This document shows positions 3,700 through 57,727 of a DNA stretch of 64,000 nt, in pieces (the stretch's first letter is position 1; each line of letters starts with the position of its first letter). The notes under the pieces are model-generated. The model was not told the origin of the DNA. It did no database searches and saw nothing but the letters and a program-made list of their open reading frames with translations. The stretch spans positions 6,138,001-6,202,000 of the forward strand of contig NC_043021.1 in the NCBI RefSeq assembly GCF_006345805.1. Reading direction: 5' to 3'. This DNA comes from Octopus sinensis. Taxonomy: Eukaryota. The position numbers and the translations under genes were made by a program.

Positions 3700-4034
3700 T
3701 ATACATACTGACCTGCAGATGTTTGATCTAAACACCAACAACTTAATGGAGAAGTTCTTAAGCAGATCAGGCCGAAAATGTCGCTAGAAGCTAGGATCAC
3801 CAAGCATAGATTGGCATATTTCGGTCATATTATGCGGAGAAAATCCCTGGAGAAGGACATCATGCTCGGAATGGTCGGTGGCAAGAGAGGAAGAGGTCGA
3901 CCAAGAACCCGCTGGCTTGACACCATCAAGAGTGGTACCGGAATGGACATAGCCAATCTGAAAGAAGCGGCCCAGGATAGAACTGACTGGAGGACACTGA
4001 TCCAACGAGTGACCGAGAGTCGACTTCGACTGAG

Positions 4035-4081
<47 letters not shown>

Positions 4082-4262
4082 GGAATGGTCAGTGGCAAGA
4101 GAGGAAGAGGCCGACCAAGAACCCGCTGGCTTGACACCATCAAGAGTGGTACCGGAATGGACATAGCCAATCTGAAAGAAGCGGCCCAGGATAGAACTGA
4201 CTGAAGGACACTGATCCAACGAGTGACCGAGAGTCGACTTCGACTGAGCGGATAGATAGATA
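3700..4262 (+). mobile_element. RTE (BovB-like) LINE 3' end plus a second ~180-bp 3' fragment
   Basis: RLAYFGHIMRRKSLEKDIMLGMVGGKRGRGRPRTRWLDTIK is the RTE ORF2 C-terminus; (TA)n and (GATA)n tails. Confidence 0.85.
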
Positions 4263-6811: not shown

Positions 6812-7154
6812 TTCCTGAGCCTTCTATCATACAATATGAAACCTCTCAACACCTAGCATAAAAACACTTTCCTTTCTATTATACTATCTCTAAGTTAAGG
6901 GAGCTCTATAGCCTTGCAAGTTACATGATAACCTCCCTAGTACTGGTGCCTCCAAACATATAAAAAAGCTACCCTATACACTTTGTAAAGTTGTTGGCAT
7001 TAGGAAGAGAATTCTGTTGCAGAAACCTTGTCAAAACAGAGAACTGGAGCCAAATGTAGCACACTGGTCGATGTCAACACGGGACCCTCCTAGCCAGTGA
7101 ATGACAAGAGAGCAGGATTTTCATGAAAGAGCAAATATGCTTGACTAGGACTAC

Positions 7155-7182
7155 ACCTGGCAACGCCGGGTCACAGTGCTAG
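7155..7182 (+). mobile_element. Helitron 3' terminus
   Basis: Hairpin acctggcaacgccgggt, then CTAG|T; same motif as 28243-28271 and 34159-34187. Confidence 0.55.
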
Positions 7183-7254
7183 TAAGACAATCAAATTGAG
7201 AACTACACAGACCAGCAGATAGGCAGCTATATAGACCAGCAGATAGACAGAGAG

Positions 7255-7971
7255 TGTGTATATATATATATATATATACAACACACACACATATATATAC
7301 ATATATACACACACATATATATATACATATATATATACACACACATATATATATACATATATATATATATACACACACATATATATATACATATATATAT
7401 ATACACACATATATATATATATACATATATACACACACATATATAAATATATATATATACACCACACACATATATATATATACATATATACACACACACA
7501 TATATATACACACACATATATATATATATATACATATATACACACACACATATATATACACATATATACACACACCTATATATATACATATATATATACA
7601 CACACACACACATTATATATATACACTTCATTTTTAGTTCATTTTACATTCAAATCAGTGAAAGTCCTGCTGCTATATTCCCAACAATAAATATAAATTC
7701 TTTGTAATCCAGAGATAATCTTACAGCAGGTCCTATGTAATTAATTACCCACCCCCACACCCACACATATTACCCAGGTCTTCCCATAGCCAGCCAGTCT
7801 TCCATTCAACTGCTGTCAACTGTTATATCTCAAACAGCTGGGTAGATTTAATGAATTATAAACTTAGTTACCACCATTTAATCCAGTAACCATCTATTGT
7901 AATCCACCTGTATTTACTATATACATACATACATATGTATGTATGTGTTTAATCACTCACACACACACATA

Positions 7972-8019
<48 letters not shown>

Positions 8020-8721
8020 CACACATGTATGTATATATACTCACACATATACATATATATATATATATATACACACATACATATACATATGTACATATAT
8101 ACACACACACAAATATATACATATATACACACACATATATATACATATATACACACACACAATATATATATATACATATATATACACACACATATATAAA
8201 TATATATATACACACCACACATATATATATATACATATATACACACACACATATATATACACAACACATATATATATATATATACATATATACACACACA
8301 CATATATATACACATATATACACACACTATATATATACATATATATATACACACACACACACATTAATATATACACTTCATTTTTAGTTCATTTTACATT
8401 CAAATCAGTGAAAGTCCTGCTGCTATATTCCCAACAATAAATATAAATTCTTTGTAATCCAGAGATAATCTTACAGCAGGTCCTATGTAATTAATTACCC
8501 ACCCCCACACCCACACATATTACCCAGGTCTTCCCATAGCCAGCCAGTCTTCCATTCAACTGCTGTCAACTGTTATATCTCAAACAGCTGGGTAGATTTA
8601 ATGAATTATAAACTTAGTTACCACCATTTAATCCAGTAACCATCTATTGTAATCCACCTGTATTTACTATATACATACATACATATGTATGTATGTGTTT
8701 AATCACTCACACACACACATA

Positions 8722-8753
<32 letters not shown>

Positions 8754-9030
8754 CACATACACACATGTATGTATATATACTCACACATATACATATATAT
8801 ATATATATATACACACATACATATACATATGTACATATATACACACACACACATATATACATATATACACACACACACATATATACATATATACACACAC
8901 ACATATATATACATATATACACACACACATATATATACATATATATACACACACATATATATATACATATATATACACACACACACATATATATACATAT
9001 ATATATATACACACACACACATATATACAC
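7255..9030. repeat. Compound (TA)/(CA) microsatellite arrays containing a 750-bp-period duplication
   Basis: Non-microsatellite block 7621-7985 recurs at 8371-8735. Confidence 0.9.
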
Positions 9031-9425
9031 ACTGGGTGCAAGGGGCAGTTGAGGACATTTCATTTTTAGTTCAATATCCATTCAAATCATTTAATGTATT
9101 GTTTTTTTGTTTTGTTTTTTTTTTCAGATAACCCTTTCAAATTCTCAGAAATTTGGAATCTGTGGAAAATCACGATTCTAAAGCCTACAAAAAAAGGCAC
9201 AAATGAAGTAACATCACACAAATCCATCACCCACCTAAACACACCCTAGAAAGTTCTAGAAAAAAAAAAATCTTCAATAACTTAGCAGCTTGGTGAAAGA
9301 GATTGATAGAATAAGTACCAGACTTTAAAAATAAGTACTGGGATCAATTTGTTTGACTAAACTCTTCAAAGTGGTACCCAACCATGGCCACATTCAGAAT
9401 GTCTAAAACAACAATAAAATTTATA

Positions 9426-17589: not shown

Positions 17590-18062
17590 CATTTCATTTC
17601 ATTTCATTTCATTTGGGTTTGAGTCCATGCTCAGGCCAAGTCGAAGACTCCACCCTCAGAGTCTGGTGTGGTTGCCAGGTTGTATTCTCTGCTTAATTTT
17701 GACATGTGTAGGAGCGAGTTTGAGTCAGTTTGTGCTCGTTGTGTATATCCTGGGAGATGGGTTCATCTCTAATGGTGCTTAAGTATCTATCCAGTTGCAA
17801 TTTGAATGATTCCACACTGCATCCTGATAGATTTCTGACATGTACCGGAATGGAGTTGAACAGTTGTGCTCCTCGAACCAACAGACTTGATTCTCGCAGG
17901 GTTTTTGCTGCCTGGCCAGCCTTTTTGTTGATTGGTGGCAGCTGGCAGCGTCTTCCGTGGCGCAGTGAGTGGTAGGTTTTGATACCAAAGTTTGGCACCT
18001 TCTGCCCTATCATTTTCCAAATGTATATAATTCGGTATCGCTCAAATCTTCTTTCTATTGAA
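17590..18062 (-). mobile_element. CR1-group LINE 3' end
   Basis: ERRFERYRIIYIWKMI...RESSLLVRGAQLFNSIP...FKLQLDRYLSTIRDEP; (AAATG)n tail. Confidence 0.8.
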
Positions 18063-18750
18063 GCATATATATAAAGCATATATATAAAGCATATATATAT
18101 ACACACACACAGATATATAGAGAGACACATGTACTTATGCATTTGTCTGTCTGTCTGTCTATCTTTTGCTTAGGCACTGCATGACTAACAACCTGGTGTA
18201 GGTCCTAATATATACATATGCTTCAGAACAAATTGTCAGGCGAGTATAGAGCAGTAATAAGAAAAAAGAGAAGACAAAGGAATTAACGATTATCTTATGA
18301 ACTTCATTAGCTTACATTTTTGAATCCCATACCAGGAAAGGCTGCAAGTTAATCAAGTTCATAACTGCTTATTTCTCTGTCATCTAATTTTTCTTGTGTG
18401 TGTGAGGGGTAGGGTGGGGTGGGGTGGGGTGGGGGATGATGGAGTAATGCAATCTGAAAAGATCTTGGTACAGGAAGTTAGTAAGCATCATGCACGTGCA
18501 TAGCCTGTATAGATGACATAAAGCGGTCGATACTCGATTGATAAAGTTTATTAATCATCATATGTTGTCCACTTTGTTCCATATCAAATTAGATGAGATT
18601 TCGATAAGATGACAGCCACTATACAACATAGTGAAGATTGCTAATTCCGTGATTATAAATTAAAGGGTGTAGGGAATGGAGAAGGTAAATCTGTACTATA
18701 CATGTTCCCAAGCCAATCTGGACATGTCTTACATAACTCAAGGTGGTAAC

Positions 18751-26106: not shown

Positions 26107-26520
26107 GTGCAGGCAGGTGAGGTAAGAAATTTGTTTCCCAACCACATGATACCAATGCATGATACCCATGCAGTGGTATCAGGGGTGTCTTCTACTATAG
26201 TCTCGGGCTATAATTTGGTAGATAGAAACCGAAAGAAGAAAAGGTCGTGTGTGCCCCCATACCACTGGACAACCGGTGTTGGTGTGTTTGCGTTCCTGTA
26301 ACTTAGCGGTTAAGCAAAAGAGATCGACAGAATAAGTACTGGGATTGATTCATTCGACTAAAATGCAAGGCGGTGCCCCAGCATGTCCGTTGTCTCATGA
26401 CTGAAACAAGTAAAAGATGAAAGACGTGTGTGTGTGTGTATGTATATATATAATATATATATACATATACATATATATATATACATATACATATATATAT
26501 ACATATACATAGATATATAC

Positions 26521-26567
<47 letters not shown>

Positions 26568-27070
26568 CATATATATATACATATACACCTACATATATAT
26601 ATACATACACATATACATATATATATCACCTGCATATATATATACATATACATACACATATACATATACATACACATATACATATATATATATATACATA
26701 CATATATATACACATACATATATATATATACATACATATATATATATACATATTATATATATACACACACACACATATATACATATATATACTATATATA
26801 TATATATACATATATATATATACATATATATATATACACACACACACATATATATACATATATATATAATATACACACACACACATATATATACATATAT
26901 ATATATACATATAATATATACATATATTATATACATATACATATATATACATATATATATATACATATATATATACATATACATATATCTACATATATTA
27001 TACATATCTATATATATATATACATATATATATACATCTATATATATATATATACATATACATTATATAC

Positions 27071-27113
<43 letters not shown>

Positions 27114-27163
27114 CATATACATATATATATATATACATATACTATATATATATATACATATAC

Positions 27164-27213
<50 letters not shown>

Positions 27214-27218
27214 TATCC

Positions 27219-27284
<66 letters not shown>

Positions 27285-27445
27285 ATACAGATACATATAT
27301 ATACATATACATATATATACATATACATATTATACATATACATATATATACATATACATAATAACATATACATATATATACATAAAACATATATATCACA
27401 ACACACACACACATAGATATACACACACACCACACACATATATAT

Positions 27446-27498
<53 letters not shown>

Positions 27499-27530
27499 CA
27501 CACACCCACATACATATTGTGTGTGTGTGT
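25510..27530. repeat. Large (TA)/(TATACA)/(TG) microsatellite and minisatellite arrays
   Basis: Units with gaatgttatgtgtgtg at 25730-26090; ~1.1-kb array at 26428-27530. Confidence 0.9.
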
Positions 27531-28476: not shown

Positions 28477-28648
28477 AGGCGCAGGAGTGGCTGTGTGGTA
28501 AGTAACCTGCTAACCAACCACATGGTTCCGGGTTCAGTCCCACTGCGTGGCACCTTGGGCAAGTGGCTTCTACTATAGCCTCGGGTCGACCAAAGCCTTG
28601 TGAGTGGATTTGGTAGACGGAAACTGAAAGAAGCCTGTCGTATATATG

Positions 28649-28683
<35 letters not shown>

Positions 28684-29275: not shown

Positions 29276-29478
29276 AATTTTCTATGGCCTGATGCCCTTC
29301 CTGCTACCAACCTACACCCGTTTCCAAGCAAGGACACACACACACATATGTAACTGTATGGTTAAGCAACTTGCTTCTGAGCTACATGGCTTCGGATCCA
29401 ATTCCACTATATGATGACACTTATGGCAAATGTCTTCTACTAGAGCACTGGGCCTACCAAAGCCTTCTGAGTGGATTT

Positions 29479-29861
29479 CTGTTTACAAGAAACAAATGCA
29501 GAGGAACTAATGAGCATCTACAACACTGGAAGATGGAACGTCTTAAGAGCAGACGGAACTTGGGAATACACATGGGTAAACAGAACACCAAGTTGGTTCA
29601 ACGCATCAGACTTCGATGTATTAGCTGGTCATGTTACCTACGGGGAGATTGGTCTCGACAACCAAATACCTTACGAAATTAACGCCTTTCAGTGGACATA
29701 GAACCACAATCTGAAGTAGGTGAAAAACAAATATCTGAATCGTCCAATTCCGCATCGAGTGCTGCTTGTTCAGCAGTTCTTTTTTTCTTGTATTCTGGAG
29801 GCATCAAAAAATTATCTGTTATGTCGTTAGTATATTTATCAATGAATTGATTTGTAAACAG
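29479..29861. other. Unidentified insert with two convergent ORF ends, inside an old SINE B
   Basis: Plus ORF open from the left edge to TAG at 29701; minus ORF open from the right edge to TAA at 29679; 11-bp inverted repeats at the edges. Confidence 0.6.
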
Positions 29862-30819
29862 AAACCGAAAGAAGCCCATCGCATGTGTGCGTGCAAGCGC
29901 ACGTTACTGTCTCTGCCTTGACATTATGCAATAGTGGTAAATTAACATCACTGTTGCAGAAGATGTGTCATTTTTTTTTTCATATTCTTTGGAAACGGCA
30001 GGTCATGGAGAAACAGGCGTGAGTTGGCGACAGGATGGGCATCCGGCTGTAGAAAGTCTGGCTGAAGATTCTATCTGACCCGTGCAAGCATGAAATGGCA
30101 GACGTTACACTGAAGATGATGCAGGCACACACACACACAACACACACACAGAGGCATACCTACAAAAATGTGACACCTGCCCCACTGATTTTGCTTGTAA
30201 CTTTCAAAAAATTGGATGGTTTAATGAAATTTACTACAAATATAGATATAGGATTGGCTGTGTAGTAAGAAGCTTGCCAAATACATGGTTCGGGGTTCAG
30301 TCCCACTGCATGGCACCTTGAGAGTAGATTGGATTTGGTAGACAAAAACCGAAGGCCCACCATGTGTGTGTGTAAATGGAGGGGGGGAATTACTGTGCAT
30401 GTGTTTGTCCCATGCCACCGTTCGAGAGCCAGTTGGTTTGTGTATGTTCACCTAATCTAGCGGTTCGACAAATGGTCCGATAGAATAAGCGCCAGGCTTT
30501 ATGTGGTCGATTCGTTCGACTAAAACCCATTCAAGGCGGTGTCCCAGCAATGGCCTCAGTGTAACGACTGAAAAGAGGTAGGAAATATTTTTTAAAATAC
30601 CTTTCAGACGGCGTAGAGTACGATGATATCGGGATTTTAGTGTGAAAAACAGAAATGGTGAGCAAGAAACGCGAAAAAGGGAAGCTCTGTCCAACTGATT
30701 CTGGTGATAGGTCCAAGAAGTGAGTCTAAAATAAGCAAGCAATAGCATTAATGGTGGAACCCCAGCTTCGCCGCTGCCCCTGGGTGAAACTGGTAACAGA
30801 ATAACAGAATATGTGTGAA

Positions 30820-31232
30820 TGGAGTGGCTGTGTGGTAAGTAGCTTGCTAACCAATCACATGGTTCCGGGTTCAGTTCCACTGCGTGGCATCTTGGGCAAG
30901 TAAGTGTCTTCTGCTATAGCCCCGGGCCGACCAATGCCTTGTGAGTGGATTTGGTAGACAGAAACTGAAAGAAGCCTGTCGTATATATGTATATATATAT
31001 ATATATATATGTGTGTTTGTGTGTCTGTGTTTGTACCCCTAGCATTGCTTGACAACCGATGCTGGTGTGTTTACGTCCCCGTCACTTAGCGGTTCGGCAA
31101 AAGAGACCGATAGAATAAGTTCTGGGCTTACAAAAAGAATAAGTCCCGGGGTCGAGTTGCTCGACTAAAGGCGGTGCTCCAGCTTGGCCGCAGTCAAATG
31201 ACTGAAACAAGTAAAAGAGTGAAAAGAGAGAG
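30820..31232 (+). mobile_element. SINE family B
   Basis: Full match. Confidence 0.85.
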
Positions 31233-57183: not shown

Positions 57184-57727
57184 ATATCCCCAACAAAGAT
57201 GTCCTCAGGCAAGCAGGAATACCAAGCATGTTTGCACTCCTCACACAAAGACGTATGAGATGGCTTGGGCATGTTAGCCGTATGAAAGATGGCAGAATCC
57301 CCAAGGACATACACTACGGAGAGCTTGCTAGGGGTACTAGGTCTGTGGGTAGACCGCTCTTACGTTACAAGGATGTTTGCAAAAGGGACATGAAGGCCTG
57401 CAACATCAATATTAGCGGTTGGGAAGCTGTTGCTGGCAACCGTGGAGACTGGCGACGTACCGTAAGAGAGGGAATACAAAGGAGTGACAGAGAGAGAGAG
57501 GAGAAATGGAAAGACAAGAAAAGACGTCAACAAGAAACTATGGCATTACAACCAGCCAGGAACAGTCTTCGCTACATTTGCGGCACCAGCCAGAGGGAGT
57601 GTTTGTCCAGGATAGGACTACACAGCCACAGCAGGAAATGTGTCAGGACATGAAATGTAAAAGCCGGACTAGACTACTTTATGCGCAACTCCATTGTCTC
57701 CCGAGACAAAAAGGATGCCAACCAACC
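57184..57727 (+). mobile_element. RTE-clade LINE 3' end (second RTE family)
   Basis: QRRMRWLGHVSRMKDGRIPKDIHYGEL...CLSRIGLHSHSRKC; TSD acatacacc at 57175-57183 and 57728-57736. Confidence 0.9.

What the first reader, a model, noticed from the sequence alone, without database searches (positions are those of the whole stretch)
29479..29861. Virus-like ambisense fragment: two convergent, overlapping ORF ends inserted in a SINE
Seen: an old SINE B is interrupted by ~380 bp of non-repetitive sequence bounded by an 11-bp inverted repeat (tctgtttacaa 29478-29488; ttgtaaacaga 29852-29862). A plus frame runs stop-free from the left edge (QETNAEELMSIYNTGRWNVLRADGTWEYTWVNRTPSWFNASDFDVLAGHVTYGEIGLDNQIPYEINAFQWT*). 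A minus frame runs stop-free from the right edge (TNQFIDKYTNDITDNFLMPPEYKKKRTAEQAALDAELDDSDICFSPTSDCGSMSTERR*, with an NLS-like KKKR and an acidic tail). The two 3' ends overlap by 23 bp. Established: convergent overlapping gene ends are typical of compact ambisense genomes (CRESS-DNA viruses, ambisense densoviruses, Polinton/adintoviruses, phage). Inference: this is the central junction of such a genome, captured as an endogenous viral element, possibly from an undescribed cephalopod virus. I do not recognise either protein.
Basis: partly seen in the sequence, partly recalled or inferred. Interest (0 to 1): 0.78.

Follow-up and report, generated by a model that had tools for sequence, protein, structure and literature searches.

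The report
Scrambled parvovirus capsid fossil in SINE
The ~375-bp insert in an old octopus-type SINE is a real viral fossil, but it is two non-adjacent pieces of one parvovirus-like capsid (VP1) gene joined in opposite orientation, not the meeting point of two genes of an ambisense genome, and it is almost certainly inert.

Summary
The described sequence is there: an interrupted SINE, two convergent open frames, and an inverted repeat that is 13 bp long, not 11. Frame openness alone is not evidence, because 9% of shuffles and 29% of window segments do as well.

Homology settles the identity. Both peptides match one protein, the annotated "capsid [Octopus vulgaris]" (536 aa, parvoviral VP1 phospholipase-A2 domain).
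- The plus peptide matches aa 334-403 (74% identity, E 3e-31 against the whole window).
- The minus peptide matches aa 67-118 (48%, E 4e-6).
- Both also match a 525-aa VP1 on a 4-kb metagenomic contig.
- Differences from the octopus gene pile up at third codon positions (15/9/37 and 2/1/10), so both frames are the true ancestral frames.

The insert is therefore about 24% of one capsid gene in two pieces joined tail-to-tail. Each "stop" is read-through into the other piece. This is an endogenous parvoviral element, rearranged like a snapback or inverted-concatemer junction.

The inverted repeat is not a transposon end. Its right arm is SINE sequence and its left arm is an inverted copy of it, which fits best with templated filler made during end-joining (inferred).

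Viral origin is supported; the ambisense-junction reading is not. It is a new member of a known kind, of modest interest.

The parts
29354..29478 (+). 5' part of an old tRNA-like SINE copy (left flank of the insert)
   Evidence: BLASTN and MAFFT alignment to other SINE copies in the window, ~72-73% identity, alignment ends at 29478. 13 further copies of the SINE core are in the window.
29479..29855 (.). Remnant of one parvovirus-like VP1 capsid gene (endogenous parvoviral element), given as one part. The left, larger share reads on the + strand and corresponds to aa 334-403 of the 536-aa relative. The right share reads on the - strand and corresponds to aa 67-118. Breaks relative to intact relatives: one 5' truncation (PLA2 domain and start absent), one 3' truncation, one internal deletion (~215 codons), one inversion, and three small in-frame indels. 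There are no internal stops or frameshifts within the pieces. About 126 of 536 codons are present.
   Evidence: tblastn of P0007 against the whole window gives only these two matches, E 3e-31 and 4e-6. DNA-level identity to the O. vulgaris gene is 72% and 79%.
29856..29889 (+). 3' part of the same SINE copy (right flank). The few bases before it are compatible with both SINE and VP sequence (junction microhomology).
   Evidence: Alignment A1: the right flank matches the SINE in register with the left flank.
29476..29488 (+). Left arm of the 13-bp perfect inverted repeat. It consists of 3 SINE bases, a stretch that is an inverted copy of the right-flank SINE bases (inferred templated filler), and the first VP bases.
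29852..29864 (+). Right arm of the inverted repeat. It consists of the last VP bases plus native SINE sequence that matches the SINE family alignment.
29471..29701 (+). It is the true VP frame over its own piece, then runs a few codons on into the inverted piece until it meets a stop.
29679..29879 (-). It starts in SINE sequence, is the true VP frame over its own piece, then runs on into the other piece until it meets a stop.

Best explanation
The insert is a dead, rearranged fragment of a parvovirus-like (invertebrate parvovirus, or 'densovirus' in the loose sense) VP1 capsid gene, that is, an endogenous parvoviral element sitting inside an older SINE copy.

Shown:
- It holds two non-adjacent stretches of the same gene. 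One is the region just after the VP1 phospholipase-A2 domain, including its basic cluster. The other is a stretch of the capsid body.
- The two stretches are joined tail-to-tail in opposite orientation.
- Both reading frames are the ancestral ones.
- Neither stop codon is a gene end.
- Nothing else of the virus is found in the 64-kb window.

Inferred:
- The inverted junction was made by end-joining of viral DNA, before or during capture. This is the same architecture as asymmetric snapback defective genomes and tail-to-tail replicative concatemers of parvoviruses.
- A ~375-bp piece around that junction was then patched into a chromosome break within the SINE.
- The 13-bp inverted repeat is a repair scar. 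The free end of the insert folded back on the already-made right junction, copied about 8-10 bases of it using 2-3-base microhomologies, and was then sealed to the left SINE end. This is polymerase-theta-type templated insertion.

With a quarter of the gene present, no start codon, no PLA2 domain and most of the capsid body missing, it cannot make a capsid protein and most likely has no function.
For: - An exhaustive HMMER search with the plus peptide found P0001 (E 8e-7) and P0003 (E 2e-5).
- P0001 carries Pfam PF08398, the parvoviral VP1 PLA2 domain (E 2e-12).
- The minus peptide was not used in that search. It matches the same protein at aa 70-108 (E 3e-8), and the plus peptide matches at aa 329-370 (E 2e-15).
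- P0007, 'capsid [Octopus vulgaris]', matches the plus peptide at 52/70 identities (E 8e-39) and the minus peptide at 27/56 (E 3e-10).
- Against the whole window these are the only two matches (the same holds for P0001).
- P0007 carries PF08398 (E 4.5e-13) and a weak IHHNV_capsid match.
- A profile of P0007+P0001 hits AAV VP1 PLA2 regions (E 2e-9) and the Penaeus monodon metallodensovirus capsid 6wh3 (E 1.5e-6).
- Codon-position differences from the O. vulgaris gene are 15/9/37 over 70 codons and 2/1/10 over 20 codons, with pN 0.15 and pS 0.86.
- The SINE flanks are in register.
- The 13-bp inverted repeat was reached in 0 of 20,000 shuffles, and its right arm matches the SINE family alignment.
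- Snapback genomes, symmetric and asymmetric, are a major class of defective parvovirus genomes, and their authors attribute them to end-joining (PMC8235507).
- Snap-back templated extension by polymerase theta is documented (PMC4912351, PMC5068794).
- The O. vulgaris capsid cluster also contains an inverted, tail-to-tail copy.
Against: - The two pieces hit no Pfam, PHROG or PDB family on their own. Family membership therefore rests on relatives.
- The parts of the relatives that match solved capsids and PLA2 domains are not the parts present in the window.
- Single-sequence structure models are poor (pLDDT 40 and 55).
- No NS1 gene or terminal hairpin is present, so subfamily and genome sense cannot be assigned.
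- The source and host of P0001 are unknown.
- The order of events at the junctions is inference. A fold-back over ~370 nt is longer than typical templated insertions.
- A 5-bp direct repeat (GATTT) at the two junctions could also be read as a short target duplication.
- No other cephalopod genome could be searched, so copy number and the empty site are untested.
Confidence: 0.85

Rival explanations
1. One reading: the insert is the central junction of a compact ambisense genome, with the 3' ends of two different, convergent genes overlapping by 23 bp.
For: Convergent open frames with overlapping ends exist. Some Densovirinae are ambisense (PMC11357303).
Against: Both peptides map to one protein, at aa 67-118 and 334-403 of 536, on the same strand in intact relatives. 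The relatives continue for hundreds of residues beyond both supposed ends. Openness of the frames is not significant.
Confidence: 0.02
2. Second-hand copy: the fragment was not captured from virus DNA. It was copied as filler from an older, already rearranged endogenous parvoviral element elsewhere in the host genome.
For: Octopus genomes carry such elements, including a cluster with direct and inverted capsid copies. Break repair can capture any nuclear DNA.
Against: Synonymous sites between the window pieces and the O. vulgaris cluster are saturated while amino-acid change is low. The known cluster is therefore not the donor. No other copy is in the window.
Confidence: 0.2
3. The ~380-bp unit is a small non-autonomous DNA transposon (MITE-like) with 11-13-bp terminal inverted repeats and a 5-bp target duplication, and it happens to carry capsid-gene pieces.
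For: There is a perfect 13-bp inverted repeat at the edges and a GATTT repeat on both sides.
Against: The right arm is the SINE's own sequence in register with the family alignment. The right GATTT lies in codons homologous to the VP gene. There is a single copy in 64 kb.
Confidence: 0.03
4. The fragment is functional for the host, for example as a source of small RNAs against related viruses or as an exapted coding exon.
For: Virus-derived insertions in TE-rich regions feed small-RNA pathways in some arthropods (general knowledge; PMC7522710 listed). Both pieces are free of stops.
Against: Stop-free frames of this length are expected by chance. There is no start codon and only 24% of the gene is present. 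The two arms are different gene parts, so they cannot pair with each other. No expression data are available.
Confidence: 0.05
5. Chance ORFs in unique DNA, a misassembly or contamination, with no viral content.
For: Openness is not significant. The first word-index searches found nothing.
Against: There is 74% identity to a capsid protein, a second independent match on the other strand, and third-codon-position excess. Both junctions lie in one SINE copy in register, which argues against a chimeric assembly.
Confidence: 0.01

Closest known systems
'capsid [Octopus vulgaris]' CAI9722213.1 / UniProt A0AA36F4J0 (P0007) and its cluster on chromosome OX597817.1
   Same: Same protein family. The plus piece is 74% identical and the minus piece 48% identical, with DNA identity of 72-79%. 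Both are integrated in an octopus genome. The cluster also has an inverted copy.
   Different: The O. vulgaris copies include two intact 536-aa ORFs with the PLA2 domain. The window holds only two short pieces, inverted. Synonymous sites are saturated, so this is a separate and older or different lineage.
P0001, a 525-aa VP1 on a 4,017-bp metagenomic contig (ENA ERZ23499376)
   Same: It has the PLA2 domain followed by a capsid body. Both window pieces match it, at aa 70-108 and 329-370. The contig size is in the parvovirus range.
   Different: It is 41% identical to the octopus protein. Its host is unknown, and it may be an exogenous virus. The rest of its contig was deliberately not fetched.
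Shrimp parvovirus capsids: Penaeus monodon metallodensovirus (PDB 6wh3) and IHHNV capsid (Pfam PF16530)
   Same: They are the nearest solved or curated capsid bodies to the octopus-type VP (E 1.5e-6 for the profile; E 0.003).
   Different: The similarity covers aa ~222-284, a part absent from the window. Those shrimp viruses lack a PLA2 domain (PMC11357303), whereas the octopus-type VP has one.
Endogenous parvoviral elements of invertebrates (PMC5013282)
   Same: They are fragments of parvoviral genes fixed in animal genomes, including molluscs.
   Different: No octopus or cephalopod case appears in the papers found. This one is unusually small and internally inverted.
Asymmetric snapback defective genomes of adeno-associated virus (PMC8235507)
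   Same: One gene region is followed by an upstream region of the same genome on the opposite strand, attributed to end-joining.
   Different: Here only ~375 bp around the turn survives and no terminal repeat is present. Whether the junction predates integration cannot be told.

Membership tests
Endogenous parvoviral element (Parvoviridae VP1-derived) | Significant sequence similarity to a parvoviral capsid protein | tested here: met
   Two matches to P0007 (E 3e-31 and 4e-6 against the whole window) and to P0001. These relatives carry PF08398 and match AAV VP1 and a densovirus capsid.
Endogenous parvoviral element (Parvoviridae VP1-derived) | Integrated in host DNA, with host sequence on both sides | tested here: met
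   Both flanks are halves of one SINE copy in register.
Endogenous parvoviral element (Parvoviridae VP1-derived) | VP1 phospholipase-A2 domain present in the element itself | tested here: not met
   The minus piece begins just after the PLA2 domain of the relatives (PF08398 covers aa 4-68 and the match starts at aa 67). Pfam finds nothing in the window peptides. This shows the fragment is incomplete. It does not argue against a VP origin.
Endogenous parvoviral element (Parvoviridae VP1-derived) | Jelly-roll capsid fold | tested here: inconclusive
   AlphaFold models of the two peptides have pLDDT of 40 and 55. No fold search was made on them.
Endogenous parvoviral element (Parvoviridae VP1-derived) | NS1 (SF3 helicase) gene, or remnants of it, from which subfamily is assigned | not tested
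   No NS1 query was available without fetching the rest of a viral contig.
Central junction of an ambisense densovirus genome | The two convergent frames belong to different genes (NS and VP) | tested here: not met
   Both belong to VP1.
Central junction of an ambisense densovirus genome | The stops are the true gene ends | tested here: not met
   The relatives continue well beyond both points (alignment A2).
DNA transposon / MITE | Terminal inverted repeats that belong to the insert | tested here: not met
   The right arm is SINE sequence.
DNA transposon / MITE | Multiple copies | tested here: inconclusive
   There is no second copy in the 64-kb window. Whole genomes could not be searched.
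Polinton/adintovirus or phage fragment | Similarity to their proteins | tested here: not met
   No PHROG hit below E 0.03. There is no relative in IMG/VR beyond PLA2-only matches.
Snapback-type rearranged parvoviral DNA | A downstream gene region followed by an upstream region of the same genome on the opposite strand | tested here: met
Snapback-type rearranged parvoviral DNA | Terminal hairpin repeat at the arm ends | tested here: not met
   The insert ends inside the VP gene on both sides. The feature cannot be expected in a 375-bp sub-fragment.
Polymerase-theta-type templated insertion at a repair junction | Extra bases at one junction that copy nearby flank sequence, bracketed by short microhomologies | tested here: met
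   The left junction carries an inverted copy of the right junction, and the repeat is 13 bp with P<5e-5. The enzyme itself is not testable.

The most novel reading that the evidence does not exclude
The fragment is the fossil of a defective, snapback-type genome of a so-far undescribed parvovirus lineage that infects, or once infected, octopuses. This lineage would have a PLA2-bearing VP1 whose capsid body is nearest to shrimp metallodensovirus and IHHNV. P0001 would be a living relative, and the intact capsid cluster in O. vulgaris would be a recent or co-opted integration.
Probability: 0.25. Interest if true: 0.55.

Novelty: new member of a known kind. Interest (0 to 1): 0.35.

Why it matters
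It adds cephalopods to the hosts whose genomes record parvovirus infection. I found no paper describing this, although the O. vulgaris annotation already names 'capsid' genes.

It ties those genes to a metagenomic virus-like contig. It also gives a small, clean example of how single-stranded DNA virus fragments enter animal chromosomes: a rearranged piece, microhomologies and a templated repair scar.

In practice, it shows that convergent 'overlapping gene ends' in a short insert can be an artefact of an inverted junction within one gene. It also shows that frame openness in this AT-rich, repeat-rich genome carries no weight.

Tried and rejected
- Word-index protein searches with both peptides found nothing, although a 74%-identical protein is in that collection. 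The index missed it.
- Pfam, PHROGs and PDB sequence searches with the peptides gave only noise. Examples are a designed Trp-rich trefoil, a kappa-carrageenase and subtilisin, all with per-domain E >0.2.
- The bacterial cadherin/Ig-repeat proteins in the HMMER list (P0002, P0004-P0006) are Trp/Thr-rich repeat noise.
- IMG/VR scans with the peptides and with the VP alignment gave nothing, or PLA2-only matches. The JGI metagenome scan gave nothing.
- Exact-product look-ups for window ORFs found nothing, so the species of the window stays unproven.
- Rfam hits near the site are all microsatellite artefacts.
- Single-sequence AlphaFold models were too poor to use, so no fold search was run.
- My first reading of an 11-bp (9/11) or 5-bp target duplication, and hence a LINE-mediated insertion, was dropped. 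The right-hand copy lies in codons homologous to the VP gene.
- Sample identifiers of P0001 and P0003 occur in no held paper.

Full report
**1. The observation**

The region reads as described. The mechanical ORF list gives a plus ORF at 29471-29701 and a minus ORF at 29679-29879 with the quoted peptides. Their ends overlap by 23 bp.

The flanks are one old copy of the abundant tRNA-like SINE of this window.
- The left flank aligns to other copies at ~72-73% identity up to 29478.
- The right flank resumes in register at about 29854.
- 13 further copies carry the SINE core.

The 11-bp inverted repeat is present. It is in fact perfect over 13 bp, at 29476-29488 and 29852-29864, and no shuffle out of 20,000 reached that length. 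The insert has no second copy in the window.

**2. Is frame openness meaningful? No.**

- The window holds 407 stop-free frames of at least 58 codons.
- 9% of dinucleotide-preserving shuffles of the insert contain an equal or better convergent pair.
- 29% of all 383-bp segments of the window do too.
- Four of the six frames of the insert are open for 60 codons or more.

If the frames are real, that has to be shown some other way.

**3. What the peptides are**

The early searches were silent or gave noise. These were the word-index searches, Pfam, PHROGs and PDB, and IMG/VR.

The exhaustive HMMER search of 1.84 billion representatives with the plus peptide returned P0001 (525 aa, E 8e-7) and P0003 (189 aa, E 2e-5). 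It also returned a few bacterial repeat proteins that I regard as compositional noise.

P0001 carries the parvoviral VP1 phospholipase-A2 domain PF08398 at its N-terminus (E 2e-12). It lies on a 4,017-bp metagenomic contig.

The decisive point is the minus peptide, which played no part in that search. It matches the same protein at aa 70-108 (E 3e-8). The plus peptide matches at aa 329-370 (E 2e-15).

Searching with P0001 then found P0007, annotated 'capsid [Octopus vulgaris]' (536 aa, 41% identical to P0001, on a 177-Mb chromosome).
- The plus peptide is 74% identical to its aa 334-403 (E 8e-39).
- The minus peptide is 48% identical to aa 67-118 (E 3e-10).
- Against the whole window, P0007 matches only these two places, with E 3e-31 and 4e-6.
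- At DNA level the identities to the O. vulgaris gene are 72% over 208 bp without gaps, and 79% over 71 bp.

**4. Are these viral capsid proteins?**

- P0007 has PF08398 (E 4.5e-13, above Pfam's cut-off) and a sub-threshold IHHNV_capsid match at aa 222-281.
- A profile of P0007+P0001 hits the PLA2 region of many adeno-associated virus VP1 chains (E 2e-9).
- The same profile hits, in the capsid body, the Penaeus monodon metallodensovirus major capsid protein 6wh3 (E 1.5e-6).

The family is therefore Parvoviridae VP1. Subfamily cannot be given, because classification rests on NS1 (PMC11357303) and no NS1 was examined.

The relatives have KKRK and KRAR there. That such clusters serve nuclear import in parvoviruses is established knowledge, not tested here.

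**5. Independent proof that both frames are ancestral**

In register with the O. vulgaris gene, the differences fall as follows:
- Plus piece: 15, 9 and 37 at codon positions 1, 2 and 3 (70 codons).
- Minus piece: 2, 1 and 10 (first 20 codons).
- Non-synonymous proportion 0.15; synonymous proportion 0.86 (saturated).

This is the signature of long divergence under protein-level selection. Most of the divergence therefore happened in replicating virus or in selected genes. The O. vulgaris cluster is not the direct donor of the window fragment.

**6. Anatomy**

In intact relatives the two stretches lie on the same strand, about 215 codons apart (alignment A2). In the window the downstream stretch comes first on the plus strand. 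The upstream stretch follows on the minus strand.

Counted against the 536-aa relative, the gene has:
- one 5' truncation (start and PLA2 domain absent);
- one 3' truncation;
- one internal deletion;
- one inversion;
- three small in-frame indels;
- no internal stop or frameshift within the pieces.

About 126 of 536 codons remain. No other VP-like sequence is in the window.

**7. How it got there (inference)**

The SINE halves abut the insert directly and in register. So a piece that was already rearranged, or two pieces together, entered one break. In-place decay of a full-length element would need two precise deletions.

Inverted junctions within one genome are typical of parvovirus DNA. Tail-to-tail and head-to-head replicative concatemers are established knowledge. 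Symmetric and asymmetric snapback genomes are a major class of defective particles, and their describers ascribe them to end-joining (PMC8235507). The O. vulgaris capsid cluster also holds a copy in inverted, tail-to-tail orientation.

At the right junction a few bases fit both the VP gene and the SINE, which is microhomology. This also explains the apparent 5-bp GATTT duplication.

The right arm of the 13-bp repeat is native SINE sequence plus the last VP bases. The left arm begins with SINE bases and then carries an inverted copy of the right junction. This is the pattern of templated insertion:
- a free 3' end folds back and pairs by 2-3 bases;
- it copies a few bases;
- it then pairs with the other end.

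Polymerase theta is known to do this (PMC4912351, PMC5068794). The fold-back distance here (~370 nt) is long for that process, which weakens the inference.

**8. Function**

None is expected, because there is no start codon, no PLA2 domain and most of the capsid body is missing. The two arms are different gene parts and cannot pair with each other. A small-RNA role cannot be excluded without expression data.

**9. Comparison and novelty**

Parvovirus-derived sequences are known in many invertebrate genomes, molluscs included (PMC5013282). My literature searches found no report for octopus or other cephalopods. The public O. vulgaris annotation nevertheless already names capsid genes of this family.

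The finding is thus a new member of a known kind. The genome-junction architecture is wrong.

**10. Limits**

- No cephalopod genome could be searched, so copy number, the empty site and the species of the window are open.
- I did not fetch the rest of the 4-kb virus-like contig or the whole O. vulgaris cluster.

Noticed in passing
L003, L006, L007, L008 (O. vulgaris GCA_951406725.2, chromosome OX597817.1, about 168.364-168.376 Mb): This is a cluster of five annotated proteins >=90% identical to each other (CAI9722210, -12, -13, -14, -15). Two are intact 536-aa capsid ORFs whose starts lie 2,993 bp apart, which is too close for full NS+VP units. There are also shorter copies (203, 200 and 453 aa), and the 453-aa copy is inverted tail-to-tail. 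A mitochondrial-carrier gene lies just upstream. Intact ORFs suggest a recent integration or co-option.
   Followed up: partly
L002 1501-2270 (Logan SRR11869391, 3.2-kb contig): This is another remnant of the C-terminal half of the same VP family (37% identical to P0007). Its frame is split once into 189-aa and 67-aa ORFs. The upstream DNA is not VP-like and has no octopus SINE core. The organism is unknown.
   Followed up: partly
L001 (ENA ERZ23499376 scaffold_6736, 4,017 bp): This is a parvovirus-sized metagenomic contig encoding an intact 525-aa PLA2-bearing VP1, 41% identical to the octopus capsid. It may be an exogenous relative. Only the VP gene plus 100 bp on each side was fetched.
   Followed up: partly
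tool behaviour, versus 41, 42: The word-index search reported no candidate for the plus peptide, although P0007 is 74% identical and shares many 5-residue words. The representative library did not list P0007's cluster either. A negative result from these searches is weak for proteins annotated in eukaryote genomes.
   Followed up: no
window 3778-4134 (+), 57228-57653 (+), 17693-18142 (-): These ORFs look like C-terminal tails of LINE reverse-transcriptase proteins, which suggests a retrotransposon-rich region. This reading is by eye from the translations and was not searched.
   Followed up: no
window 7150-9130 and 26300-27530: These are kilobase-scale TA/CA-type microsatellite tracts. They create many long spurious ORFs and spurious microRNA-family hits in Rfam.
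   Followed up: no
window 28477-28665, 30260-30350, 30868-30990 and ten other sites: There are 13 younger copies of the same tRNA-like SINE in 64 kb, several within 1.5 kb of the interrupted old copy.
   Followed up: partly
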